Shown: positions 1,638 through 63,469 of the stretch, in pieces
How positions within the stretch are numbered: position 1 is the first letter of the stretch
Layout: the number at the start of each line of letters is the position of its first letter
Source: Octopus sinensis
Taxonomy: Eukaryota
Direction of reading: 5' to 3'
Length of the DNA: 64,000 nucleotides
NCBI RefSeq assembly: GCF_006345805.1
Contig: NC_043014.1
Span: forward strand, 9,052,001-9,116,000
Notes under the pieces: generated by a model
Database searches by the model: none
Told to the model about the DNA's origin: nothing
What the model saw: only the letters and a program-made list of their open reading frames with translations
Program-made: the position numbers and the translations under genes

Positions 1638-1721
1638 TATTTATGTGTGTGTGTGTGTGTATGTATGTCTAATATATATGTGTATATGTATGGCTAATCG
1701 ATTATGTGCGTAACTAGTTGG

Positions 1722-1800
1722 TACCTATTTCATCAAAACCCGAAAGGATGAAAGACAAAGTCGACCATAACGGAATCTTGAACTCAGAACGCAAAGCCGG
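1722..1800 (-). mobile_element. SINE family E fragment
   Basis: cgaaaggatgaaagacaaagtcgac...gaactcagaacg matches other E copies. Confidence 0.65.
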
Positions 1801-5110: not shown

Positions 5111-5316
5111 AACGCCGGGCGAAATGCGTAGCCGTATTTCGTCTGCCGTTACGTTCTGGGTTCAAATTCCGCCGAGGTCGACTTTGCCTTTCATCCTTTC
5201 GGGGTCGATAAATTAAGTACCAGTTACGCACTGGGGTTGATGTAATCGACTTAATCCGTTTGTCTGTCCTTGTTTGTCCCCTCTGTGTTTAGCCCCTTGT
5301 GGGTAGTAAAGAAATA
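5111..5316 (+). mobile_element. SINE family E (tRNA-like head, Nin-like central domain), 5'-truncated
   Basis: gttcaaattcc B box; ttgcctttcatcctttcggggtcgataaattaagtaccag resembles the Nin/Inv domain as I recall it; tail gtagtaaagaaata. Confidence 0.85.
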
Positions 5317-7359: not shown

Positions 7360-7420
<61 letters not shown>

Positions 7421-7422
<2 letters not shown>

Positions 7423-7655
7423 ATTTGTTACTCGTGCCTGTGTTTATCCATCCATCATCGCCTGACAACCGATGTTGGTGTGTTTACGTTCCCATCAGTT
7501 AGCGGTTCGGCAAAAAACGTCCGATAGAATAAGTACAAGGCTTACAAAGAATAAGTCCTGGGGGTCGATTTGTTAGACTAAAGGAAGTGCTCCAGCATGG
7601 CCGCAGTCAACTAACTGAAGCAAGTAAAAGAATAACACAATGTATATATATATAT

Positions 7656-7708
<53 letters not shown>

Positions 7709-7925
7709 TGTATGTATTTGTTACTCGTGCCTGTGTTTATCCATCCATCATCGCCTGACAACCGATGTTGGTGTGTTTACGTTCCCATCAGTTAGCGGTT
7801 CGGCAAAAAACGTCCGATAGAATAAGTACAAGGCTTACAAAGAATAAGTCCTGGGGGTCGATTTGTTAGACTAAAGGAAGTGCTCCAGCATGGCCGCAGT
7901 CAACTAACTGAAGCAAGTAAAAGAA
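7421..7925 (+). repeat. Tandem duplication (293-bp period) of a SINE A 3' half plus microsatellite
   Basis: 7421-7632 and 7714-7925 appear identical. Confidence 0.85.
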
Positions 7926-7935
7926 TAACACAATG

Positions 7936-7968
<33 letters not shown>

Positions 7969-9435
7969 GTATGTATATATGTATATATATATATACACAC
8001 ATACATACATATACATACATACATATACACACACACGAAGAAACTGACAGAATAAGTACCAGGCTTATCAAAAAAACTCACTAGACAGTGTCTCATATTT
8101 TTGTTTGCCCACTCAGTTGTATCTATCAATTTTTCTTTGTATATATATATATATATATATAACACCCTAATGAGGGTCTTAACTCCTAAAATCATTTCTT
8201 TTATGATCCAAAACTAGGTCAAAAGTACTGAAATTTGGAAATTATATTCTATGCATAAGGGCCATAACCCCCATGACAATTCATATATTTTTCCTTTTGA
8301 TGAAATTTAAACCATAGATATTAGACACAAATGAAGTAATTTTTTATAAAATTTCATCTTCTTACAAGTTAGAAAGACCCTTCTATGGGGACTTAACACC
8401 CACAATTTTGTCATTTTATCTAAGCAAAAACGAATACAGTGGTGCTCTTGGAAGCTGTAGGGTTACCCGGACATAAAAGATGAGCATTATTTGTAATTCA
8501 ATAGTACAACAGTGTAATAGTTTGCTTTCACATACACTTACATTGTGATTTCTGTAATGTGATGCATAAATTGTCAAGTAAACGAGAGGCATCTTTGCCG
8601 CCACAGATTCAGTTGCAAAGTGTTGAGTAAAGTTATTTGGTTGCAGACCTCCTCTCAGTCTTTTTATAATCACTGGCTCACACATAGTCCCCAGATGGTA
8701 ACATTGATTTCAAGGCCTTCCCAGATGAGTGACTGGTTATTCAAAGACATTTATAGATTGCAAATTTATTCTGTCCAATTACGTATCAGTATAGTGGTCA
8801 TTTGCAAACTCCAGAGATGACACTTTCATTTCTCCTTAGCCTTCACGTCACACAGTTGTTAATGTTTATTTCAGTTGGGTCACGCCCTTCCAATTGCTAT
8901 AGATTCGTAATGCATCTTACGACTGTGCCTGTCACCTGAATGGTGAGGAATTCTACATTGGGAGTGGTAACGACTAGGGTAGGATAGCTGACTGCTTATT
9001 GTGATCATTCGTCTTTTGGTTTCCTGTAGCTTTGCTCTCTTTTACAAACCCAGTGAACATATATTTCCTATTTCAAAGAAGTTCAAACAATAGACATAAG
9101 ACCCAAGTTAAAAAGATTCTCAACAATTCAACTTCTCTAGTTGACATTAAGACACCCACTCCCGACAGGGGCCTTAACTCTCACATTTTAGAGCTCCATG
9201 ACCTTCATTTTTCAAAAGCAAAATTCTTTTAACAGGTTCAATAAGACTGGAATTTTAGAATATGCGCATAAAAATCAGTAGTATGGGATACATCTGACAC
9301 GATTGGAAATTTTTTTAGGGTATGTAAAGAGGGAAATATCCCTCATCTGCAATTTTGATGAAATTCGAAACATAGATATTCCAGTTCATTACAGAAAATA
9401 AAGCAGAAAAGTCTAATTCTTCAATTGCATGTTAC

Positions 9436-13045: not shown

Positions 13046-13272
13046 TCCTCAGAAAATAAAGACAAAATTGCATAGCTTACGTCAAGTAATTTATATCCCT
13101 CTGAGCTGTATTAAATAAGCAGAACAAATATTTTAACATTTAGTTCGCATATTTTCCAATTGTTTTTCAGTCTGAGATATTGAAGAAGAAAAAGTAGTTT
13201 ACTTTTTAAATCTTTCAAAACCCCGTTATAATGTTTCGCTCTGTATAAGTCTTTTTTAACATATCACTATAT

Positions 13273-13876
13273 ATTTCTTTACTACCCACAAGGGGCTAAA
13301 CACAGAGAGGACAAACAAGGACAGACAAACGGATTAAGTCGATTACATCGACCCCAGTGCGTAACTGGTACTTAATTTATCGACCCCGAAAGGATGAAAG
13401 GCAAAGTCGACCTCGGCGGAAGTTGAACTCAGAACTTAACGACAGACGAAATACCTATTTCTTTACTACCCACAAGGGGCTAAACACAGAGAGGACAAAC
13501 AAGGACAGGCAAACGGATTAAGTCGATTACATCGACCACAGTGCGTAACTGGTACTTTTTTAATCGACCCCGAAAGGATGAAAGGCAAAATCGACCTCGG
13601 CGGAATTTGAACTCAGAACGTAACGGCAGACGAAATACCTATTTCTATTTCTTTACTACCAACAAGGGGCTAAACACAGAGAGGTCAAACAAGGACAGAC
13701 AAACGGATTAAGTCGATTACATCGACCGCAATGCGTAACTGGTACTTATTTAATCGACCCCGAAAGGATGATAGGCAAAGTCCACCTCGGCGGAATTTGA
13801 ACTCAGAACGTAGCGGCAAACGAAATACTGCTAAGCATTTCACCAGGCACGCTAACGTCTCTGCCAGCTCGCCGCC
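13273..13876 (-). mobile_element. SINE E trimer within one 19-bp TSD
   Basis: Three ~180-bp units, one head; TSD ttttaacatatcactatat at 13254-13272 and 13877-13895. Confidence 0.9.
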
Positions 13877-15289
13877 TTTTAACATATCACTATATTCACA
13901 GTGATTAATGATTAACTGTTAATGAGCGGCTTTTATAACTTTGTTATTTCGCCGATGCTCTGTAGCAGTTATAAATTGGAAATTTTGTAAATCCACTTTG
14001 ACATATATTACCATATGTCCAGTAATGGAAATTTCTTGTACTCTTACAATTGATTTACTGTTCGTTTATCGCCATTCTTTTGCGTACCGACAATATTGTT
14101 TCTCCTATGTTGTTTCCCAAGCTTCTGCATACTGCCACACAGCCTAGGTTCTTTGAGCTTCAAATAAAGCCCTAATTTACTTTAAAGCACTGTCTGTCTT
14201 TAAACTTGAGGGTTGAGTCTTCATTGAAACATAAAGACATAGCACGTTTTCGTCTTATGCAGCTTGTAACAGAGGAGTTGGAAACTTGTTTATGAACTTT
14301 TCAATACTATGTACATATTAGGTTGCTTTTGATATCTTATTCATTTTCTAAAACATACTTCATATAACATGGGTAAAATTTTAAGCCAAATTTAGCAAAA
14401 TAAAGCGAAATATTTCGGCCTTTCTTGCTTTAAACGTTGACACAAGACAACACCTTGCTGTCAGTTTTACGTGTTGAATATCTCCAAGAATTGCTGTTTG
14501 AATAAGAATGTTCTTACAATTCAATTTGTGGTTACATTCTGTAGGTTTTGATACTAGTGAAATTCTTTTTGCTAGGGTCGCATGTTCTTTCATGTGTGTT
14601 TAGGAAGGCAAAATGGGGGAAAAATATAGAGCTTTGAATCTGAGAGTTTATGGTAAATGTATGTTTGTACCTTCTTGTCAGTTTACATAATTAAAGCACC
14701 TAAAACGGTATGCCCTTCTTGTTGAATTCCATTGTGGATTTAACATTAGATTTATTACAAGCATCCAGCCACAAAATGAAACAGGCAGCCAGATATTAAT
14801 TTTTTTTAAAGTATGATGTAAAATGTATTTCGAAATATTTGTAAATATACATCATGAATTTCTTCTCATGGTAACAATCACTAAGTTGGCGTATGTGAGG
14901 ACTACTTTAGTTCCCCTGTCAGTCTCTGATATTTGTCGGTTCGTTGTGTCATCAAATATGAAGAAATGTTGACGTTACACGATTCTAGGACAAGCAACAA
15001 TAAAGGTTTTAAGTGTGTTCTGATAACCCAAATTGATATGTATTAAGCCAATACTTAGTCACATTGATTCCATATTCATGAGGGATAATAATGCGCAAGA
15101 TTAAAGTATCAAGGTAAACAATAATTTCATTGTAGTTTACTATCTTTAGGAAGAGTTAAGTACATGTAGATCATTTATAATATTTTGTATGTTTCTAATT
15201 GAATCTTAGTAAGATTTCCAAATATTACTTAACATGTGTATTTTGAATGCAGGATCTAATTCCAAATCCCCAGTGATAGTATTTCAATA

Positions 15290-16299: not shown

Positions 16300-17900
16300 C
16301 AATGAGAAAATTCATAATGTGTTCACAGTTAGAGCCAATTGCTTAATTCCTTCTTTTCTTTGCACAAAAATAACTTTTAATTATAGCTAGTGACTCATTA
16401 TGATTATCACCACCCTTTCTAAAATTAGGCTCAACTAGCATAGGATTTCAACAATTTTTTCGTCTAATGAAAGTTAGAATTGTAGGAAGTAGCTGAAAGC
16501 TTCAGATCTCCCCCAAAGGCCACTAAATATGTTCACTTGATTATCGGCTAATCTTCTGATTGATATTAATCTTTTATCTGATTTTGCGCATATCTGAGCT
16601 CGATCTAGAAAGCGATTCTTATTGCTCTGTGAACTTGGTCTTAAAACACAAATCTTATTGCATTTATTATCTTTGGTCTTAATTCTCATGTTTTAGGTTG
16701 ACGTATCGAATCTATGACACATTCTATTTCAAATAATCTTTTCTGCTCTAGGTACAAAGCCCGAAAGTTTTTGGGGAGGGAGCCAATCGATTAGATCGAC
16801 CCCAGAATGCAACGGGTGCTTAATTGATCGACTCCGAAAGGATGAAAGCCAAAGTCAACTTAGGTGGAATTTGAACTCTGAATGTAAAGACAGATGAAAT
16901 ACTGCTAAGCATTTCGCCCGGCGAGCTAACGTTTCTTATTTCTTTATTGCCCACAAGGGGCTAAATATAGAGGGGACAAACAGGGACAGAAAAACGGATT
17001 AAGTCGATTACGACGATCCCAGTGCGTAACTGGTACTTAATTTATCGACCCCGAAATGAGGAAAGGCAAAATCAACCTCGGCGGAATTTGAACTCGGAAC
17101 GTAACGGCAGACAAAATACATATTTCTTTACTACCCACAAGGGGCTAAACACAGAGGGGACAAACAAGGACAGACAAACGGATTAAGTCGATTAAATCGA
17201 CTCCAGTGTTTCACTGGTACTTAATTTATCGACCCCGAAATGAGGAAAGGCAAAGTCGACCTCGGCGGAATTTGAACTCAGAGCGTAACGGCAGACGAAA
17301 TATCGCTAAGCATTTCTCCCGGCGAGCTAACGATTCTTCCAGCTCGCCGCCTTATTCTATTTCAAATAATGTTACTTTGTTCAAAGCGGTTCCTAATGTA
17401 GTTTCTCATCGTTGTCATATTTCTTCCGAATTTCAGAATAATTTCATCTGGAAAATTTTGTGCATCTTCCAGAAGATTTAGCTCATTGGAAAAATAGCTT
17501 GTCTGCATTATAATTATCGAATATATCTCATATTACGAATTACCTGGATATATCACCAATAATGTTATCTGGAGTCATTGGGTGTTTCGTGTTATATCAC
17601 TCACCCAGGAAAGCTACAGATGTGCTGCAGTGTCCCACTCCTCAGGTACACAGAGAAAGCTGTCGTCTCTACTTTCACCAAAACAAGTAGGGTAGTTTTA
17701 AAGAACCGTTGTAAACGGTTTGTCTTTAAAGCTTTATGCATTGGAACTCCAGGAATAATTTTTGCCCTTCTCTCTTTGTTTCCAGCTTCTTATGTACTTT
17801 TTCCCAGCTGGATGTATCCCAATCACGCACTCGGGTCGGTCCTCCTGTACTGACTTTTATCCTGGATCAGTGATGCCTTGTTATTCGTCTGAATCTCGCC
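16300..17900 (-). pseudogene. Ancient LINE reverse-transcriptase remnant interrupted by the SINE E trimer
   Basis: Minus-strand fragments VPEEW...ITLLVIY, KFGRNMTT, FDT, FLDRAQI and GDLKLSAT occur in the order expected for RT motifs; many stops. Confidence 0.4.
16738..17353 (-). mobile_element. SINE E heterogeneous trimer within one 17-bp TSD
   Basis: TSD attctatttcaaataat at 16721-16737 and 17354-17370; the terminal unit carries the alternative tail. Confidence 0.85.
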
Positions 17901-20596: not shown

Positions 20597-21720
20597 TCAT
20601 CGACGACAGTGAACAGGTGTGGGCGCCGTTCGTAAGGTGCGCCTTCCCGCAGCTCGTCTCACTGACCGAACTGCAAACATGAATAAAAAAGAGACCGAAA
20701 CTGGGCGATTGGGACCGAGAGTGTCGTCAAGCTGTACAGCAGCTCTGCCGTCCGGGATCAAACTTGTGCAACTTACAAACGACTCAAGCGTTCTATAGAG
20801 GATTAGTGGAGGGGAGGTCCGACGACACACTCGGGGTAAACCTGGGCGTCGACGAGAAATTCCTAACCCGCCTTTTTGAGGACGTCGTTCGGGCCGGGGC
20901 CTATGGATAACTTCCAGAGATCCCTGGCTTGGCAATGTTATCGAGACGCACTACCAGTTCGAGAGTAGATCTACAGACAGGGTTCGAAAACCATCACCGG
21001 ACCGACCTGCCCGAGATGCGGCCAGAGCGACGAAACCGTTCTGCACGCACTCGTGCAGTGTCCAGATATTTCAGAGCTGTGGACCTTCGTCGAACAGCTG
21101 TTGTCGCGTGTAGGACGGGCCCGGTTATCGGCCGAGTCTATCGTGAATATTGTTCCGCCACCTTCCTTTAAACGGGAAGGAAAAACAGTTTTCGTAACAC
21201 TGATAGCTATGGCGAAAGAATGCGTGTGGTGGACGCGTTTGAAAAGCTTACAAACAAACACTTTCCTTTCTGTTCAGTCTCTCGTTAACTTGTTCAAGTA
21301 CCACTTGAAAAGGAGGATGAGAATAGAGAGAAAAGTGTTGTCGAATGAAAGTCTGAATATAAAATGGGTAAATGTGGCAAAAATGGTCAGTATGAAAGAC
21401 GACACCATTTTAAGCATAAACCTATAACGAGAGGAAAGGTACATACTCTTAAGTACATTTTGAACTGCCTGAGGTGACCTTGGTCTTTTTTGTAGGTTTT
21501 TCTTTCCAAGCCTACACCTAAACTGTGAACAACATCGATTCTCCCTCTTTTTGGGGGAACTTTATATATTTCTTTCTTCTTTTGTACACCACATAACCCA
21601 AAGATCCCTATTGAACGAACTTTTTCTTTGTGTCCCACCCATCCCACCTCGAAAAGAAAAACTCTACATTGTATTTCGTCTATTTTCTGTGTTTAGCCCT
21701 GTGTGGCCATAATAAAAATA
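20597..21720 (+). mobile_element. Tx1/L1-clade LINE 3' fragment, copy 1 (ORF2 C-terminal zinc-binding region plus 3' UTR)
   Basis: DNFQRSLAWQCYRDALPV, CPRCGQSDETVLHALVQCP, then ORF 21053-21427. Confidence 0.8.
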
Positions 21721-21722
21721 TA

Positions 21723-22446
21723 TGCCTCCTTCCTTCAAACGGGAAGGAAGAGCTATTTTCATCATCCTTGTGGCTATGGCGAAAGAATGTATCTGGTGGA
21801 CGCGTCTGAAAGGATTGGAGACAAACACTTTCCTCTCTGGTCAATCTCTCATCAACTTCTTCAAGTACCACTTGAAAAGGAAAGTGAGAGTAGAGAGGCA
21901 AGTTTTGTCTAGCGAATGTTTTAAAAAAGATGGGTGAATGTAGCAAGGATGGCACGTATGAATGACGAAGCCACCACCTTGAGCATAATCCTATGAACCC
22001 AGAAATTGAAAACAGAGGGTTACCCACTTGCAAACAAATGGTGGTAACATATAACAATATTGACCAAGGTTACCGTGGTCTTTTTCGTAGGCTTTTCTGC
22101 CCACGGATAAACCTTACTTGTTGCTTTCCCCTTTACACCATATATCATAACACTGTGATACACGATCCCTATTGATCGTTCTTTTTTCCTCTTCCCTTTT
22201 TTTCCCCTTTTTTCTTCTTTTTCCATTTCTCTTTCCTTTTGTTTCCTTTTCCTTTCTTTTTTTTCTTTTTATTCTTTTTTTGTTTTTGTTTTTGTCTTTT
22301 CTTCCCTTTTACGATCCCTCTTGATCGAAAACCTACGCCACCCCCTTTTTTTTCTTTTGTTTTTGTTCTCTTCATCCCCCAAAAGAAAAGCTCTACCTTG
22401 TAACTTGTCCCATCTGTGTGCAGCCCTGTGTGGCCAATAAAGAAAC
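21723..22446 (+). mobile_element. Tx1/L1-clade LINE 3' fragment, copy 2, with (ATCT)n tail
   Basis: PPSFKREGRAIFIILVAMAKECIWWTRLKG; ends gccaataaagaaac followed by (tatc)n. Confidence 0.8.
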
Positions 22447-22517
<71 letters not shown>

Positions 22518-23726
22518 GACGACGGTGAACAGGTGTGGTCGCCGTTTGTGAGGCACGCTTTCCCGCAGCTCGTCTCCATGACCGAACTGCAGTCGTGGAT
22601 CAAAAAGAGGCCGAGGAAGGGCGAATGGCACCGCGAGTGTCGCGTTCCTCTCAAGCAACTCTGCCGTCCTGGGTCGACCTTAAGTGACTTCAACACAACC
22701 AAAGCATTCTATAGGGGGTTTAGTGGAGGGGAGGTACGACGACGAGCTCGGGGCGAACCTGGACGTCGACGAGGAGTACCTGACCCGCCTGTTTCGGACG
22801 ACTTTCGGGCCAGGGCCCATGGACAACTTCCAGAGATCCCTGGCCTGGCAGTGCTACCGAGAAGCGCTACCCGTTCGGGATAAGCTCTACAGACACGGCT
22901 CGAGAAACACAGGGGGGCCGACCTGCCCGAGATGCGGTCAGAGCGACGAAACCGTTCTGCACGCACTCGTTCAGTGTCCAACAATTTCCGACCTGTGGGC
23001 TTATGTCGAACAACTGCTGTCACGTGTGGGACGAGTCGGTTATCAGCTGAGTCTATCGTCATATTGTCACGCCTCCTTCCTTCAAACGTGAAGGAAGAGC
23101 TATTTTCATCATCTTGTGGCTATGGCGAAAGAATGTATCTGGTGGACGCGTCTGAAAGGATTGGAGACAAACACTTTCCTCTCTGGTCAATCTCTCATCA
23201 ACTTCTTCAAGTACCACTTGAAAAGGAAAGTGAGAGTAGAGAGGCAAGTTTTGTCTAGCGAATGTTTTAAAAAAGATGGGTGAATGTAGCAAGAATGGCA
23301 CGTATGAATGACGAAGCCACCTTGAGCATAGTCCTATGAACCCAGAAATCGAAAACAGAGAGTTGCTTATTTGCAAAAAAAAAAAAAAAGAAATATAAAA
23401 TGTGACCTCATTGACCGAGGTACCGTGGTCTTTTCCGTAGGCTTTTCTTTCCACGGGTAAACCTCACCTGTCCTCCCCTTTACACTTCATATTGACATTT
23501 CTGTGATAACGATCCCTATTGATCAATTTTTTTTCCTCTCCACCCCTTTTTTTTTTTTTTTTTTTTTTTTAACCCCACTTTTTGTCCTCTTTCTCCTTTT
23601 ACGATCCCTTTTGATCGAAAATCCCCCTTCCTTTTTTTTTTTTTTTTTTTTAAACCTTCAAAAGAAAAAGCTCTACCTTGTAATTTGTTCTATCTGTGTG
23701 CAGCCCTGTGTGGCTAATAAAGAAAC
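22518..23726 (+). mobile_element. Tx1/L1-clade LINE 3' fragment, copy 3, between (ATCT)n tracts
   Basis: ORF 22684-23091 with C-x2-C...H-x4-C knuckle; collinear with copy 1. Confidence 0.82.
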
Positions 23727-23727
23727 A

Positions 23728-23758
<31 letters not shown>

Positions 23759-23769
23759 ATTAACTACCC

Positions 23770-23828
<59 letters not shown>

Positions 23829-24125: not shown

Positions 24126-24383
24126 ATAAATAGACAGACATACAGACAGATCGATAAATATACGGGCGTTTGTGTATCTACAGGTGTATGGGGTGCTGTG
24201 TACCTACATAAAATACTAAAATTCTTAGTCATATACTTATAACTATTGACTACTTTCTCCCTTATGATTTCTAAACTTAATTTTTAATTTAAATTCTGTC
24301 AGAAGATTTCTCCCGTTATATCTACACCTCGATTCGCTTAAATTATATATTTTAAGTTTCCTAACTTCTAGAATATTCTAGTA

Positions 24384-40755: not shown

Positions 40756-42026
40756 ATTTGCATCCACTGTTAGCAAAACTGTTGTGTGGACGCCCCCAGA
40801 CGATGAAGTAGGCTAACCCAATGCGTAGATATAAATGGAGAAGTCTAGACGCCAGAATAGAGTAGTAGTAGGGAAGTGTAAAGTATAAGAGTATAGGGGC
40901 ATCCGAACGTGCGATATAACAAAAATGAAAACCGTTTCGTGTAAATAAATATAAAAGCAATTAGCGCATTTTAATTCTTTTCTTGATAGTTTCCGCATAA
41001 AAGACGGCGAATTAGTTGAAACATTAGCACAACGGGGAAAATAGCGGCATATCGTCTGTCTTGACTTTCTGAGTCCAAAGTGGTGGCGTTATCTTTGCAT
41101 TTCATCCCATTCGGAGTCGATAAAAATAAGAACCAACTGTTTATTTGGGGGTCGATGTAATAGACATAACATTCTCCTCGAAATCGCTGACCTCAAGCCA
41201 AACTTCGTGACGTTATATCTTAAAATTTATTTTCTACGACCAACGATACTAAGCACCGAAAATGCCACCTAAATTTGAAAAAATATCCCACCAATAATTC
41301 TTTAGCGAACGGAATCTTAAAGACCTATCTTATCAGTACCAAACTTATCACTCTAACCGAACAACTCAGCAAATTTTCACGAATTCAGTATAAAATATAC
41401 GATGAAGGAAGAAAATAAGCTCTCAAACCTCAGAGTAACAACAACATTGAAAAGATATGTAAAAATTTGAAACAATCTTTCAATAATGACCAACAGATTG
41501 CAATTCACCACATACGGAAATATCCGAAGATAATTCCAGGTTTATTCTCCTTATCAAAAAGCTGAATAGACTATGTTCGGAATTAAAATTCAGATATGAG
41601 ATAATTCGCTTTTTGGGATATGCAGAATGATAATAACAAAACAGAAATTTACGAACGTTGAGAGACATGACCCCAACAAATATTTCTTAATAAAATACAA
41701 TATTCAAAGACGTTGACCAACAAACAATTCTACAGCAAAAATTGACTGTATAAAATACGAAATGCAAATGGATTAATGAAATTGTGAGCTAAAGGACAAA
41801 GAATACAAGGATATAGACCCAGAAACGAAGATCGATTTTACACCACTGAACCGACGTAGAATTTCAAGTTCGTGTTTATAAATTCTGGAATCAAGTATGT
41901 GAGAAGGAACCACTGATTTCTTTACAAGAATACGTGAAAGGCGAAGAGTAGCTTTCTAAGAAGAACGATCCGAAAAGGAATGCATGTCAGAAAAGCCTGT
42001 TCGAATATAAACATTAAGTAGAAAAT

Positions 42027-42419
42027 GGCGGCGAGCTGGCAGACACTTAGCGGTATTTCGTCTGCCGTTACGTTCTGAGTTCAAATTCCGCCGAGATCGA
42101 CTTTGCCTTTCATCCTTTCGGGGTCGATAAATAAAGTATCAGTTTCGCACTGGACTCGATGTAATCGACTTAATCCCTTTGTCTGTCCTTGTTTGTCTCC
42201 TCTATGTTTAGCCCCTTGTGGGTAGTAAAGAAATAGGTATTTTGTCTGCCGCTACGTTCTGAGTTGAAATTCCGCCGAGGTCGATTTTATTTTTCATCCT
42301 TTTGGGGTCGATAAATAAAGTACCAGTTTCGCACTGGGGTCGATATAATTGACTGAATCCGTTTGTCTGTCCTTGTTTGTCCCCTCTATGTTTAGCCCCT
42401 TGTGGGCAATAAAGAAATG
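42027..42419 (+). mobile_element. SINE E dimer within one 16-bp TSD
   Basis: TSD tataaacattaagtag at 42006-42021 and 42420-42435; junction aaagaaataggtatt near 42235. Confidence 0.9.
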
Positions 42420-42799
42420 TATAAACATTAAGTAGCAAACTAGCTTCGTAGGATACTGACAAGGGATATCGATGACAATGACGTAATGACATTTGGTTTT
42501 TAATGAAGGCTTGGCGATACAAATAGCTAATAGGAAACAGCGGAAAATCACGTTAAAGCTATTCGCTGAATGAGTTTATGCACAGATGGACACATATACA
42601 TATATAATATATATATATACAATCGTAAACACGTATAGGTACGCGTGCATGTGTGTGAAAACACAGCTGTATAAAAATATATATGTTATTACATTTATAC
42701 ATACAGAGGCAAACATATACACACGCACTTCCTTTCTCTCAAATACGTGTCTTTATACACTCACAAAATATCTGCGTGCAGAAGCTATTCATGGGCCTA

Positions 42800-49625: not shown

Positions 49626-51195
49626 GTGGAGACAGACACCCTCGCACATACATACAAGAATGCATATTCGTACACTCTTTGTTAATATGCTTTCTTCAAT
49701 TTGAAAAAGGGATTCTTTCACGAAATAATTCTGGATTTTAATCCGTTTATGCAGGGCTATAGAATATCATATAACTTTATTTTTATGCTTTCTACATGTA
49801 TCTTTTCGTATTTTGCTTAATCTCTTAATTTCATTGCCTAAAGACATTGTTTCAACAATGCTCGTACATATAAATTCTCAGGAACATATTATTTAAAGGC
49901 TTGCAACAGGCACGTTAAATATATCATAAACGCATCATACAGTATACCATAGAAATTAACTTTTGTTGACTTCTTGTATTTCGAACATGTGGAGTTACTA
50001 GTCTCTAACGCTCTGCACTACGACACACATTTTCAGTAAGGTGGAGTGTCGCTGTGTGAAATAAGATGCCAAGAAGCTCCTGCCACACGTCGCACCATCC
50101 GGGTATCGAGTCTGGATATAGTAATCTTGGGTCCAAGAGACTAAGCATTTGGGCATAAGCATTCATTTTCAATGTATAGGAAATATCTAATGATGGAAAC
50201 AATTTGCTGTGACCGAGTTAATGAATAAATTTAAATTGTATTTATATAAAGATTTCATACTCTTTATTTGGTTGTGTGAGTAATTCATTACTGCGTTGTT
50301 TATTGCTCATTAGTTGTTTTGCCTAAAAGACACACGCAGCTAGGTATGAAATAGAAAAAAATAATTACCATAATTTGAAAGATGTTGGGCTGCATATCCA
50401 CAGTTGCAAATTGAAGTGTTTACTGTAAAGTGCAAGGTAGAATGTTTAGGCATTAATTCAATAGATAATTAAATGTTAATTGTTAATGAGTAATTATACG
50501 CGTTAAATTAAAAAGCAATCATTATCTTTATTAGGGAAGAAAATGAGGATAAAATAATTTATCCGACAAGCTTATCTATTCCTAAGAATAATCGTGAATC
50601 AGGATGGATTTTCAAGACAATTAGAAGAAAAAATGATTAATCAACGAAAATTACACAGGTGTATTGTTTTATTCTGATTTCTCAAAAACTCAATTTTAAT
50701 AAGAAACAATTTGTGGCACAATAGGTTTTCATTTAGGCTGGCGAATAAAAGCAATTTTCTGTTATCTTGTATTTGTTTCAGTTATAGGATTTCCGCGATT
50801 GTAGGGCCCCACCTGGAAGCATTTGGTATTTCTTTATTACCCACTAGGGGCGACACAGAGGGGACACCACAAGACATTGGGGACATAGAACATTATAATT
50901 AAATTTATGAACAATGAATTATTAAATGAAAAAATGATAATATGAAAGCGATGCTAACAGCCCCATCCGCCAGCATCACTTACCTGTCCTTAATCACCCA
51001 TTTCCAAATACAATTCCTTCCTTTCTTATCACACTCTTCGTTTTCCTTTCATACTTCTCTATCATTTCATCCTGCATTTCATCAATTTTATACCCTCTTC
51101 CTCACGCTTCCTCACCAATGTGTCCATAAATTCATCTTTCAAAACCGCGTAACCTGGAAGCATTTGGTCGAACAAATCACCTCTAATCTCTTCTC

Positions 51196-52750: not shown

Positions 52751-52827
52751 CATATCGAACATATATGCATAATACTCACACATGTATGTATACATAGACA
52801 CTCAAAAGCTTATCTTCAAAGAATATC

Positions 52828-53235
52828 TATTTCTTTATTGCCTACAGGGAGATAAACATAGAAGGTACAAACAAACGTATTAAGTCGATTACATCGACCC
52901 CAATGCATAACTGGTACTTATTTAATCGACCCCCAAAAGGATGAAAGGCAAAGTCAAACTCGGCGGAATTTGAACTCAGAACGTAACGGCAGACGAAATA
53001 CCTATTTCTTTACTACCCACAAGGGGCTAAACACAGAGGGGACAAAGAAGGACAGGAAAACGGGTTAAGTCGATTACATCGACCACAGTGCGTAACTGGT
53101 ACTTAATTTATCGACCCCGAAAGGATGAAAAGTAAAGTCGACCTCGGCGGAATTTGGACTCAGAACCTAATAGAAGACGAAATACCGCTAAGCATTTCGC
53201 CCTGCGTGCTACCGTTTCTGCCAGCTCGCCGCCTT
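52828..53235 (-). mobile_element. SINE E dimer within one 18-bp TSD
   Basis: TSD ttatcttcaaagaatatc at 52810-52827 and 53236-53253; junction gaaatacctatttc near 53001. Confidence 0.9.
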
Positions 53236-54219
53236 TTATCTTCAAAGAATATCGTTGGAGAAGAACTGCAGCGAGTAACGTGGCAAATTTCATGTATATG
53301 TATCGAGGACTGTCAAACCTGGATGAAATTAAATATATAAAAATCATTGGCGGCAGTTGAAATAACTGAAATAGAGAAATTACTGAGAAGCACAAAGAAA
53401 AGTTACAATTGATATTTCAAAGATAAGAAGAACCAGTTTATGTAACACGATAAATGTTTATTTATCGCAGAAGGAAGTACGAAGGAAATATCAAATAGAT
53501 ATTCATTAATGCATCTGCATAAGATGAAATTATTGTATTTCGTAGAAATATATTTACAGATCTAAAAGCCATTATATGTAGATTAACTAAATGGAGGTCG
53601 AGTTTTATTCGTTGTTGTGGAGACTGGATCTTAACATCATCGTCTCACCAAAAACTTATGGCTGATGTTTATGTTCTTAAACATCCAACTATGCATCATT
53701 GAAGTTTTACGATTTTAAAGATTCGATAAAGTAGGATATAAAAGTACAGAAGCTACTTAAAAATATATAGTGAAAGTTTGTATACCGGTAATATTTGAGA
53801 TGTAATTGTAGGGAAAGTAACGTGCAATGTTTTATAGTTGTGAGAGAGAGAAATGGTTTTCTCCTCGAAGAAAATGCTTTTAGAACGATCATCAGTCATT
53901 TCAATATGTGAAGCTGTTGACTCAACCAAACCAATAACTTTACGCTAAACCAACCAGTATATTAATGATGTAAGGCTTCCTAGCTCTGTGAATTTGTATG
54001 GGATACATCATCTTCTGTAGTCCTTTTAAAGTCATTATCAAAAGTACATGTGAAGTGAATGTGGCAAACCCTCTGCCACACCATAAATTTACTCAGGGTT
54101 TTGATGGTTTGACACAAAGAGAGGATGAATTGGTGTGCATAGACTCACTCATTGATGGAACTCTCCTAAACTAGAAAGTTACAAAGTCGAATAATAAAAA
54201 CAACCTTGTTACTCTCTCC

Positions 54220-56562: not shown

Positions 56563-56758
56563 TTTCTACTCTAGGCACAAGGCTCGAAATTTTGGAGGTG
56601 GAGGGTAGTCGATCAGATCAACCCCAGTACGTAACTGGAGTCGATCTGATCGATCTGGTATAAAAGGCGGTGTCGACCTCGGCAGAATTTGAAATCCTAA
56701 CGTTTGTGTTTACGTTCTGAGTTCAAATTCCGCCGAGGTCGACTTTGCTTTTCATCTT
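56563..56758. mobile_element. SINE E (alternative tail, minus strand) joined to an inverted E fragment
   Basis: 56672-56693 is the reverse complement of 56722-56743 (one mismatch). Confidence 0.7.
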
Positions 56759-56855
56759 TGTGCCTACAATATTGTCATTAATGATTTGTTATTTAAAGAA
56801 AAGTAATTATTTTCAGCTTAACATTTAATTAGGTTAACAGTTTTGTTCATTATTT

Positions 56856-59416: not shown

Positions 59417-59802
59417 GATAGTCGATTGCGCGAGGGTGACAGAGGGATAGATTTAGTTACATTGTCCGCAAATATGTTAGGTAGACTTTCATTGCGCTTT
59501 AAGCAAAGGGAGCAGGTATGCAAATGCTGGCCTTAAAAAAAACTTGAAAATGAGATAAAAAAGATTATGCATATGCGTTAGATTTTATACAAGAAAATTT
59601 CAGCATCCCTTGCATAATATGAAATCGATGTAGACAACAAAAGTCGATGCATTGTTTGTTAACTTTATGGACAATCCTGAAGACAAGAAATGTTTCTTTC
59701 CGGAATGAAGTCAAAGGCTGGTTCCAGATTTTTAGCTCGGCCAGCATGTTCAAGGGAATGGATAAATCTACTACTTTGGCTTCAGTGCTCAACTACAACT
59801 TA

Positions 59803-59912
59803 ATTTATCTATCCCAAACCGATGAAAGGCAAAGCCGACCTCAGTAAAATTCGAACTCAGAACGTAAAAAAGGGGACGAGATGCCGCTAAGCATTTTGCT
59901 CGGCATGTTAAC
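59803..59912 (-). mobile_element. SINE E fragment, diverged
   Basis: gatgaaaggcaaagccgacctc...gaactcagaacgt. Confidence 0.65.
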
Positions 59913-63238: not shown

Positions 63239-63464
63239 GCCGGCGAGCTGGCAGAATCGTTAGCACGCCGGGCGAAATGCTTAGCAGTACTTCGTCTGCT
63301 GTTACGTTCTGAGTTCAAATTCCGCCGAGGTCGACTTTGCCTTTCATCCTTTCGAGGTCGATAAATTAAGTACCAGTTACGCACTGGGGTCGATGTAATC
63401 TACTTAATCTGTTTGTCTGTCTTTGTTTGTCCTCTCTGTGTTTAGCCCCTTGTGGGTAGTAAAG

Positions 63465-63469
<5 letters not shown>
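63239..63469 (+). mobile_element. SINE family E, full-length monomer
   Basis: Head gccggcgagctggcagaatcg to tail gtagtaaagaaata. Confidence 0.9.

What the first reader, a model, noticed from the sequence alone, without database searches (positions are those of the whole stretch)
13254..13895. SINE E multimers: one head, two or three bodies, one TSD, the same junction at four loci
Seen: trimer 13273-13876, trimer 16738-17353 and dimers 42027-42419 and 52828-53235, each inside a single 16-19-bp TSD. Units rejoin at tail aaagaaata(g/t) to internal gtattt(c/t)gtctgcc. The junction gaaatacctatttc is itself an inverted repeat, so the RNA 3' end can pair with the restart site. Units within a locus share private variants (cacagagaggac at 13 kb, cctcatttcgggg at 17 kb, ttcgcactgg at 42 kb). 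Inference: either RT jumps back to the 3' end of the same RNA at a structure-defined site, or multimeric source loci are transcribed from one head.
Basis: partly seen in the sequence, partly recalled or inferred. Interest (0 to 1): 0.7.

Follow-up and report, generated by a model that had tools for sequence, protein, structure and literature searches.

The report
One-headed SINE with repeated bodies
A short retrotransposon in this animal genome often occurs as one promoter "head" followed by two or three copies of its body, each array inserted in a single event; it most likely spreads as a multi-unit element, which is an uncommon but known kind of SINE evolution.

Summary
Four of the eight SINE-E loci in the window carry one tRNA-like head followed by two or three 184-nt units. 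Each array lies inside one exact 16-19-bp target-site duplication (TSD). Five junctions are identical: tail AAAGAAATA, one base (G or T), then GTATTT(C/T)GTCTG. None is expected by chance.

Three corrections:
- The 17-kb "trimer" is an E dimer plus a 5'-truncated unit of a different SINE family, joined at a different point.
- The 13-kb "private" variant also occurs in a monomer at 63 kb.
- Variant sharing within a locus is not significant (p = 0.11-0.16).

Units within a locus differ by 5-16%, about as much as unrelated copies, although the TSDs are perfect. Units of different loci also share non-CpG variants. A LINE-like tail variant (GGGCAATAAAG) marks only the 3'-most E unit, in three loci. 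So the units already differed at insertion. This argues against post-insertion duplication and against re-copying of one RNA.

Best reading (about 0.55): multi-unit source elements are transcribed from one head, with an inherited junction and recombination between units. The 17-kb chimera shows that reverse-transcriptase template jumps do occur. The restart point lies at the 3' edge of the anticodon-like loop, so a recurrent site-specific jump remains possible. No genome-wide census could be run.

The parts
13254..13272 (.). Left copy of the 19-bp TSD of the 13-kb trimer (TTTTAACATATCACTATAT)
   Evidence: Exact 19-bp match with 13877-13895.
13273..13455 (-). 13-kb unit 3, the 3'-most unit. Its tail ends AAAGAAAT next to the TSD. 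It is 2.2% from the consensus.
   Evidence: blastn q48-231 at 97.8%; alignment.
13456..13639 (-). 13-kb unit 2. All 7 of its derived states are also found in other units of the window; it has no singleton variants.
13640..13829 (-). 13-kb unit 1, with a 6-nt tail duplication (GAAATAGAAATAG). It carries variants TTAAATAAG and T98, which are shared with unit 2 at 53 kb.
13830..13876 (-). Single tRNA-like head of the 13-kb trimer (q1-47). The base before GTATTTC is A here but G at both internal junctions.
13877..13895 (.). Right copy of the 19-bp TSD.
16738..16936 (-). 5'-truncated unit of a different SINE family. It runs from about head position 16 to its own tail ...CCTAGAGCAGAAAAG and is joined to the E tail at a non-canonical junction.
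   Evidence: About 80% identity to E over q15-164; the 3' third is unrelated to E.
16937..17120 (-). 17-kb E unit 2, with the tail variant GGGCAATAAAGAAATA ('E-b').
17121..17304 (-). 17-kb E unit 1, with tail GGGTAGTAAAGAAATA followed by junction base T.
17305..17351 (-). Head of the 17-kb composite. A 17-bp TSD lies at 16721-16737 and 17354-17370, and two extra A bases lie between the TSD and the head.
42027..42051 (+). Head of the 42-kb dimer, with an internal deletion of about 24 nt. A 16-bp TSD lies at 42006-42021 and 42420-42435, and AAAAT lies between the TSD and the head.
42052..42235 (+). 42-kb unit 1 (TAG tail).
42236..42419 (+). 42-kb unit 2 (E-b tail, GGGCAATAAAGAAATG).
52828..53002 (-). 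53-kb unit 2 (E-b tail). It has a 10-nt internal deletion and is 9.8% from the consensus.
53003..53186 (-). 53-kb unit 1 (TAG tail).
53187..53233 (-). Head of the 53-kb dimer. An 18-bp TSD lies at 52810-52827 and 53236-53253.
22396..22445 (+). 3' end of a LINE fragment whose tail (...CTGTGTGCAGCCCTGTGTGGCCAATAAAGAAAC, followed by (TATC)n) is homologous to the SINE tail q183-229. This is the likely partner-LINE family.
   Evidence: The upstream ORF carries zf-RVT (PF13966).
23684..23725 (+). 3' end of a second LINE fragment with the same kind of tail (GGCTAATAAAGAAAC followed by (TATC)n).

Best explanation
SINE E is a tRNA-derived SINE with a tail taken from a LINE. It exists both as a monomer (about 231 nt) and as a tandem-body form. 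The tandem-body form has one promoter head (q1-47) followed by two or three copies of the module q48-231.

Shown:
- Each array was integrated in one target-primed reverse-transcription event, because it has one TSD.
- The units already differed from one another at integration.

Inferred:
- The arrays are progeny of multimeric source elements that RNA polymerase III transcribes from the single head.
- The junction between the tail and the anticodon-like loop was created once or a few times, probably by an end-to-end template jump of the partner LINE's reverse transcriptase. It has been inherited since.
- Unit number (2 or 3) and the mosaic variant patterns come from recombination between homologous units. 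This could be RT switching between units or RNAs, or unequal exchange or conversion in source loci.

The 17-kb locus is such a dimer RNA onto whose 3' end the RT jumped after starting on a different SINE's RNA.
For: - One event per array: exact TSDs of 19, 17, 16 and 18 bp bracket each whole array, and no TSD lies between units.
- Fixed junction: 5 of 5 homotypic junctions are identical, against 0 expected by chance.
- Units were not identical at insertion. They differ by 4.9-15.6% within a locus and 3-15% between loci. About 7 TSD mismatches would be expected if this divergence were post-insertion, and 0 are seen (P about 9e-4). 13-kb unit 2 has no singleton variant at all.
- Position-specific diagnostic states: C171/A173 (GGGCAATAAAG) with A152 occur in the 3'-most E unit of 17 kb, 42 kb and 53 kb. 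C171/A173 are in no internal unit and no monomer (3/4 against 0/8, Fisher about 0.018). This resembles the diagnostic sites of the two Bov-A2 monomers (PMC4324840).
- Every array has exactly one complete head, and none of the 8 loci starts headless at q48. This is expected if only head-bearing multimers are transcribed.
- The consensus unit has no T4 run, so polymerase III could read through a multimer.
- The three dimers have G at q48, while three monomers have C.
- The RT can join RNAs end to end: the heterologous unit at 17 kb lies inside one TSD, with no internal TSD.
Against: - The sample is only 8 loci and 13 units. No genome-wide data could be obtained.
- The 13-kb trimer lacks the E-b terminal tail and shares T147 with a monomer. 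It is either a second multimer lineage with the same junction or a recombinant. That favours recurrent formation at a preferred site.
- The upstream units of the three dimers share no diagnostic state, and the dimers are 9-15% apart from each other.
- Variants are shared between loci in swapped unit order: 13-kb u1 resembles 53-kb u2, and 13-kb u2 resembles 53-kb u1. No simple tree of multimers fits.
- All four arrays carry internal T4-T5 runs in the sense strand. These particular copies would be poor polymerase III templates. One such run (GATTTTGCC) is shared by three loci and may predate insertion.
- The restart base sits next to the only hexamer in the element that is complementary to the tail (about 1% by chance). 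Pure descent leaves this as coincidence.
Confidence: 0.55

Rival explanations
1. Recurrent, site-specific template jumping. Each array is made de novo. The LINE RT copies a SINE RNA from its tail and is blocked, or runs off, at q48 on the 3' side of the anticodon-like loop. The cause would be loop cleavage or a modified base at the position-37 equivalent. The RT then jumps to the 3' end of another SINE RNA, and repeats this until it reads through a head.
For: - The same restart base is used in two apparently different multimer lineages: the 13-kb T147-type trimer and the E-b dimers.
- The heterologous jump at 17 kb shows that this RT does jump.
- q48 lies in the 3' part of the loop of a 13-bp hairpin and of a degenerate cloverleaf.
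- The junction base is G even where the locus's own head has A (13 kb).
- Multimers have G or A at q48, while three monomers have C.
- Mosaic units fit draws from a mixed RNA pool.
- There is precedent for R2 end-to-end template jumping and for L1 chimeras (own knowledge; PMC3510499 reference 49, PMC4476161).
Against: - The E-b tail is found only in the first-copied E unit and never in an acceptor or a monomer (Fisher about 0.018). This would need an extra assumption.
- No headless q48-truncated copy is seen among 8 loci, although 5 jumps would have occurred.
- The head is not recognised as a tRNA by Rfam or by default ARAGORN. Recognition by tRNA-modifying or tRNA-cleaving enzymes is therefore speculative.
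- It would require a jump probability of about 50%, far above known chimera rates (own knowledge).
Confidence: 0.2
2. RNA-level ligation before reverse transcription. A SINE RNA is cut in the anticodon-like loop. The tail of another SINE RNA pairs with UAUUUC (q50-55), imitating the missing strand of the stem. A tRNA-type ligase (RtcB) then seals the nick, giving a head-unit-unit RNA that is retrotransposed.
For: - The tail hexamer GAAAUA is perfectly complementary to q50-55, directly next to the junction. It replaces the head's own CGAAAU strand.
- The junction lies where tRNA exon ends meet.
- There is precedent: RtcB ligation precedes the retrotransposition of U6/L1 chimeras (PMC6789731).
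Against: - The duplex is weak (-7 kcal/mol).
- It needs a 2',3'-cyclic-phosphate tail end, for which there is no evidence.
- It predicts headless unit-unit products, and none is seen.
- It does not explain the position-specific E-b tail or the non-canonical 17-kb junction.
Confidence: 0.08
3. Post-insertion tandem duplication of the body at each locus, by replication slippage or unequal exchange after a monomer inserted.
For: - A single TSD around each array is compatible with this.
- A few variants are shared by units of one locus: 17-kb C59/A62 and 42-kb A81/T93.
- A clear DNA-level tandem duplication exists elsewhere in the window (7360-7974, 98% identity).
Against: - The same junction at 5 places has no flanking microhomology that could drive it, because the 3' flanks differ.
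- Units are 5-16% apart, against 98% identity for the true duplication.
- Differences between the units of a locus are shared with other loci.
- The heterologous unit at 17 kb cannot arise this way.
Confidence: 0.04

Closest known systems
Composite (dimeric or multimeric) SINEs that propagate as such, for example Alu (two 7SL-derived arms) and ruminant Bov-A2 (two Bov-A monomers with diagnostic sites)
   Same: Units are joined head-to-tail at a fixed junction. The whole composite is mobilised as one element with one TSD. Some units are told apart by position-specific diagnostic substitutions (PMC4324840).
   Different: Here only the body is repeated: the 3' half of the tRNA-like region, the central domain and the LINE tail. 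A single A-box head sits in front, every unit carries its own B-box-like motif and a complete LINE tail, and unit number varies between 2 and 3. Monomers coexist with multimers and are the youngest copies in the window.
LINE-mediated chimeric retrocopies (U6/L1 and similar) made by RT template switching or by RtcB ligation
   Same: The 17-kb locus carries segments from two different RNAs in the same orientation inside one TSD. The upstream RNA is joined at its exact 3' end to a 5'-truncated downstream copy (PMC4476161, PMC6789731, PMC11838501).
   Different: The homotypic junctions are at one fixed base rather than at variable truncation points. Multimers make up half of the loci in the window, whereas such chimeras are rare.
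[quoted passage not shown]
   Same: A tail is joined directly to the end of the previous template with 0-1 extra base and without microhomology (PMC3510499 and its reference 49).
   Different: Known jumps start from the true 5' end of the template. Here the donor end is internal, in the loop of a hairpin, so a processed RNA or an RT block would have to be invoked.
SVA-type VNTR variation and SINE-derived tandem or satellite arrays
   Same: A retrotransposon carries a variable number of internal tandem units.
   Different: The units here are whole 184-nt SINE bodies, each with its own LINE-recognition tail. They are as divergent from each other as dispersed copies are, so they were not expanded in place recently.

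Membership tests
LINE-dependent tRNA-derived SINE | tRNA-like head with an internal polymerase III promoter | tested here: inconclusive
   There is no tRNA hit with ARAGORN defaults or with Rfam. A degenerate cloverleaf (q19-94, anticodon loop CTTAGCGG, Leu or Ala) appears only at a 70% threshold. Motifs like box A and box B (GAGCTGGCAGA, GAGTTCAAATTCC) are visible by eye.
LINE-dependent tRNA-derived SINE | 3' tail shared with a partner LINE | tested here: met
   SINE q183-229 aligns at about 78% with the 3' ends of two LINE fragments (22396-22445 and 23684-23725). These lie downstream of an ORF carrying zf-RVT.
LINE-dependent tRNA-derived SINE | Variable-length TSDs flanking each copy; short and non-coding | tested here: met
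   TSDs of 13-19 bp flank 5 loci. The only ORFs are short antisense ones with no homologues.
Composite or multimeric SINE family that propagates as a multimer | Fixed inter-unit junction, with a single TSD around the composite | tested here: met
Composite or multimeric SINE family that propagates as a multimer | Position-specific diagnostic differences between units, shared across independent insertions | tested here: inconclusive
   The E-b tail (C171/A173, with A152) is in the last E unit of 3 of the 4 arrays, and C171/A173 occur nowhere else (Fisher about 0.018). The first units share no diagnostic state, the 13-kb trimer lacks E-b, and other variants are shared in swapped order.
Composite or multimeric SINE family that propagates as a multimer | Multimeric transcripts from source loci | not testable with these tools
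   No transcriptome data are available. The consensus has no T4 terminator, but the four copies here do.
RT template-switch chimera | Two distinct RNA-derived segments in the same orientation inside one TSD, with no internal TSD | tested here: met
   Met at 17 kb, where an E dimer is joined to another SINE family.
RT template-switch chimera | Junction positions that vary between independent events | tested here: not met
   For the homotypic junctions, 5 of 5 are at the same base. Only the heterologous junction differs.
Post-insertion tandem duplication (VNTR or satellite-like) | Units of an array are each other's closest relatives, and their differences are private | tested here: not met
   Within-locus distances are 4.9-15.6%, about the same as between loci. 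The differences between units are shared with other loci, and the permutation p is 0.11-0.16.
Block or cleavage at tRNA position 37/38 (modified base, loop nuclease or tRNA ligase) | Junction maps to the 3' side of the anticodon loop | tested here: inconclusive
   q48/49 are the last bases of the loop in a sub-threshold ARAGORN cloverleaf. In the RNAfold structure, q48 (closing wobble pair U43-G48) directly follows the 4-nt apical loop of a 13-bp hairpin. The tRNA likeness itself is weak.
Block or cleavage at tRNA position 37/38 (modified base, loop nuclease or tRNA ligase) | An RNA 5' end or an RT stop at that base in vivo | not testable with these tools
   This needs RNA data.

The most novel reading that the evidence does not exclude
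The multimers are made anew at each insertion. The position-37 equivalent of the SINE's anticodon-like loop (q48, G or A) would be modified (m1G or m1I type) or cleaved in the RNA. The partner LINE's reverse transcriptase would stop there and jump to the 3' end of another SINE RNA, so a tRNA-type RNA mark would decide between monomer and concatemer. This would explain three things: the fixed restart base, the G at junctions where the head has A, and the lack of multimers in the C48 subfamily.
Probability: 0.15. Interest if true: 0.8.

Novelty: new variant of a known kind. Interest (0 to 1): 0.45.

Why it matters
If the tandem-body form is a propagating family, it is a clear case of a SINE duplicating its LINE-recognition module behind a single promoter. 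That is a possible first step from a dispersed repeat to a tandem or satellite array, and it gives a marker system for subfamily history in what is probably a cephalopod genome (my recollection of the other repeats in the window; not tested).

If the junction is instead re-made at each insertion, it marks a defined stop-and-jump site for a non-LTR reverse transcriptase in vivo. That would tie tRNA-like RNA processing or modification to retrotransposon structure, and it would be directly testable.

Either way, annotation pipelines that mask these loci as adjacent independent SINE copies would over-count insertion events.

Tried and rejected
- External copies. Exact-pattern scans with a 28-nt SINE core found nothing in viral, metagenome or bacterial/archaeal genome collections.
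- The antisense ORF that spans the junction has no protein homologue.
- The LINE C-terminal ORF gave only 4 hits, on contigs of at most 1.5 kb and at 58-81% identity, so probably from other species. These contigs showed a related LINE tail but contained no SINE E. No census or orthologous site was therefore possible.
- Sequence strings of the element were not found in the paper library. A cephalopod literature search returned hits that were mostly the species name 'sinensis'.
- Rfam and default ARAGORN do not recognise the head as a tRNA.
- Sequential independent insertion into the tail of a resident copy was rejected. It would leave a 13-19-bp TSD between units, and none is present.
- Microhomology-driven slippage was rejected, because the 3' flanks differ between loci.
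- Assembly artefact was rejected, because units differ by 5-16%.
- RNA editing or an unusual mutation spectrum as the source of unit divergence was rejected. The spectrum is ordinary and dominated by transitions.
- An 11-nt match to the unit start (GTATTTCGTCT) in one LINE 3' UTR (21671-21681) aligns with a different part of the SINE tail and does not explain the junction.

Full report
WHAT IS THERE

The window is eukaryotic DNA, AT-rich and full of microsatellites. I take it to be cephalopod-like from my recollection of the other repeats in it; this was not tested.

SINE E has a consensus of about 231 nt:
- A head, GGCGGCGAGCTGGCAGAAACGTTAGCACGCCGGGCGAAATGCTTAGC (q1-47).
- A module q48-231, which starts (G)GTATTTCGTCTGCC and ends ...GTGGGTAGTAAAGAAATA.

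A blastn census finds eight E loci. Four are single copies: 5112-5316 (5'-truncated at q27), 30382-30592 (3'-truncated), 34987-35215 and 63241-63469. Four are arrays, at 13 kb, 17 kb, 42 kb and 53 kb. Older related families share the head and central domain but have other tails.

The last 45-50 nt of the SINE are homologous to the 3' ends of LINE fragments at 22396-22445 and 23684-23725. Those fragments end in AATAAAGAAAC followed by (TATC)n, and they follow an ORF with a zf-RVT domain. SINE E is therefore a SINE that shares its tail with a LINE.

CHECK OF THE OBSERVATION

- TRF independently reports arrays with a 184-nt period at 13272-13829 (3.0 copies, 91% matches), 16937-17302 and 42052-42418 (2.0 copies each, 89%). 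The 53-kb pair is too diverged for TRF at the score used, but it is clear by blastn.
- Each array has one complete head.
- Each array is bracketed by an exact direct repeat of 19, 17, 16 or 18 bp. Random flank pairs give a mean longest shared run of 5.
- The junction AAAGAAATA-N-GTATTTYGTCTG occurs five times, against zero in 100 shuffles.
- GAAATA-CC-TATTTC is a perfect inverted repeat.

Three points differ from the finding:
1. The 17-kb "trimer" is an E dimer followed by a 199-nt unit of a different SINE family. That unit begins at about head position 16 and has its own tail. Its junction is AAAGAAATA|AGAAACGTTAGC.
2. The 13-kb "private" variant is also in the 63-kb monomer.
3. Sharing of derived states between units of one locus is not above permutation expectation (p = 0.11-0.16).

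WHAT THE UNITS SAY

Units of one locus are far from identical: 4.9-7.1% apart at 13 kb, 10.9% at 17 kb, 10.9% at 42 kb and 15.6% at 53 kb. Units of different loci are 3-15% apart.

The insertions nevertheless look young. All 70 TSD positions match. If the unit divergence had arisen after insertion, about 7 TSD mismatches would be expected after correcting for the AT-richness of the TSDs (P about 9e-4). This figure ignores the fact that TSD ends are defined by identity. In addition, 13-kb unit 2 has no variant that is unique to it.

The differences between units of a locus are also not private:
- C171/A173 with A152 (tail GGGCAATAAAG, closer to the LINE's AATAAA) occur in the 3'-most E unit of 17 kb, 42 kb and 53 kb. 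C171/A173 are found in no internal unit and no monomer: 3/4 against 0/8, Fisher about 0.018.
- TTAAATAAG and T98 link 13-kb unit 1 with 53-kb unit 2.
- T101 and C130 link 13-kb unit 2 with 53-kb unit 1.

The units therefore differed when the loci were formed, and their relationships are reticulate. This excludes simple post-insertion duplication. The genuine DNA-level tandem duplication at 7360-7974 is 98% identical by comparison. It also argues against repeated copying of one RNA.

WHERE THE RESTART POINT LIES

The head folds into a 13-bp hairpin, q31-43 with q48-60, with a 4-nt apical loop. ARAGORN finds a degenerate cloverleaf only at a 70% threshold. Its anticodon loop is CTTAGCGG, and its last two bases are q48 and q49. 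Rfam and default ARAGORN find no tRNA. The repeated module thus begins on the 3' side of the anticodon-like loop.

The tail hexamer GAAAUA is complementary to q50-55, the only TATTTC in the element. A random restart point would fall this close to it about 1% of the time. The duplex is weak, at -7 kcal/mol against -15 for the head's own strand.

MECHANISM

Shown:
- One integration event per array.
- Units were heterogeneous before insertion.
- The homotypic junction is fixed.
- One heterologous chimera lies inside a single TSD. It is best explained by an RT jump from another SINE's RNA onto the 3' end of an E RNA, since an independent insertion would have left its own TSD.

Inferred, and my preferred reading (about 0.55): the arrays descend from multimeric source elements transcribed from the single head. 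In this reading the junction is inherited, a terminal unit is diagnostic for the dimer lineage, and recombination between homologous units changes unit number and produces mosaics. This explains the position-specific tail, the invariable single head, the absence of headless copies that start at q48, and the high share of arrays without needing an unusually efficient jump.

Points against this reading:
- The 13-kb trimer has the same junction but no E-b tail, and it shares T147 with a monomer.
- Some shared variants occur in swapped unit order.
- The dimers are very diverged from each other.
- All four arrays contain internal T4-T5 runs.
- The palindrome at the junction would be a coincidence.

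RIVALS

- Recurrent site-specific stop-and-jump at q48 (about 0.2). It fits the 13-kb trimer, the G at junctions under an A-bearing head, and the split between G/A at q48 in arrays and C in three monomers. It does not fit the position-specific E-b tail or the lack of truncated copies.
- RNA ligation splinted by pairing of the tail with q50-55 (about 0.08). The precedent is PMC6789731.
- Post-insertion duplication (below 0.05).

COMPARISON WITH KNOWN SYSTEMS

- Composite SINEs that travel as multimers, with diagnostic differences between units, are known (Alu; Bov-A2, PMC4324840).
- LINE-mediated chimeras formed by template switching or ligation are known (PMC4476161, PMC6789731, PMC11838501).
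- End-to-end jumping by non-LTR reverse transcriptases is known (PMC3510499, reference 49).
- Template switching is the usual explanation for module exchange among mollusc and cephalopod SINEs (PMC4758252).

What is unusual here is the architecture and the boundary. There is one head, then 2-3 full bodies, each with its own LINE tail. The repeat boundary falls exactly at the 3' edge of the anticodon-like loop, next to a tail-complementary hexamer. I rate it a new variant of a known kind. I could not check it against Repbase or SINEBase, or against the octopus SINEs OK, OR1 and OR2.

LIMITS

There are eight loci and thirteen units. No other copy of this genome, no orthologous locus and no RNA data could be reached. 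The statistical statements are therefore weak, and the choice between descent and recurrent jumping rests mainly on one association (p about 0.02) and on prior plausibility.

Noticed in passing
window 20602-23802 (+): Three 3'-terminal fragments of the putative partner LINE lie head-to-tail: about 20602-21722, 21724-22517 and 22518-23760. They are about 79-80% identical to each other. The second and third are separated only by (TATC)n. This resembles the tail-to-internal joining seen in the SINE arrays. It could reflect RT jumping or repeated insertion into the LINE's own microsatellite tail. No TSD could be defined because of the long (TATC)n and the nearby assembly gap.
   Followed up: partly
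window 7360-7974: A 293-bp unit, consisting of another repeat plus its (TA)n(TG)n microsatellite, is duplicated 2.1 times at 98% identity. This is a recent DNA-level tandem duplication and a useful contrast to the 84-95% identity of the SINE-E units.
   Followed up: partly
window 56607-56759: A SINE fragment (q66-166, minus strand) abuts an inverted 50-nt piece of SINE E (q64-113, plus strand, 96% identity). This 5'-inversion arrangement is of the kind attributed to twin priming in LINE-mediated insertions.
   Followed up: no
window 42027-42051: The head of the 42-kb dimer lacks about 24 nt (q18-41, the 5' strand of the anticodon-like hairpin) and has CA in their place. The box-A-like motif is kept.
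   Followed up: no
window 17352-17353, 42022-42026, 53234-53235, 35216: A-rich extra bases (AA, AAAAT, AA, A) lie between the 5' TSD copy and the first G of the head. They could be untemplated additions by the RT or transcription that starts just upstream in the source loci.
   Followed up: no
window 21671-21681: One LINE 3' UTR contains GTATTTCGTCT, an 11-nt exact match to the start of the SINE unit (about 0.03 expected by chance in the window). It aligns with a different part of the SINE tail, and no role was found for it.
   Followed up: partly
window 1706-1794, 2623-2777, 41005-41169, 59783-59912, 50827-50866: Older SINE families share the same head and central domain (TTCATCCTTTCGGGGTCGAT) but have different 3' parts. 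There is also an isolated tail fragment with a third tail variant (GGGTAATAAAGAAATA). Together these suggest a SINE superfamily with exchangeable tails.
   Followed up: partly
window 24383-24482: A run of 100 N (an assembly gap) lies next to the long (TATC)n tract downstream of the LINE fragments.
   Followed up: no
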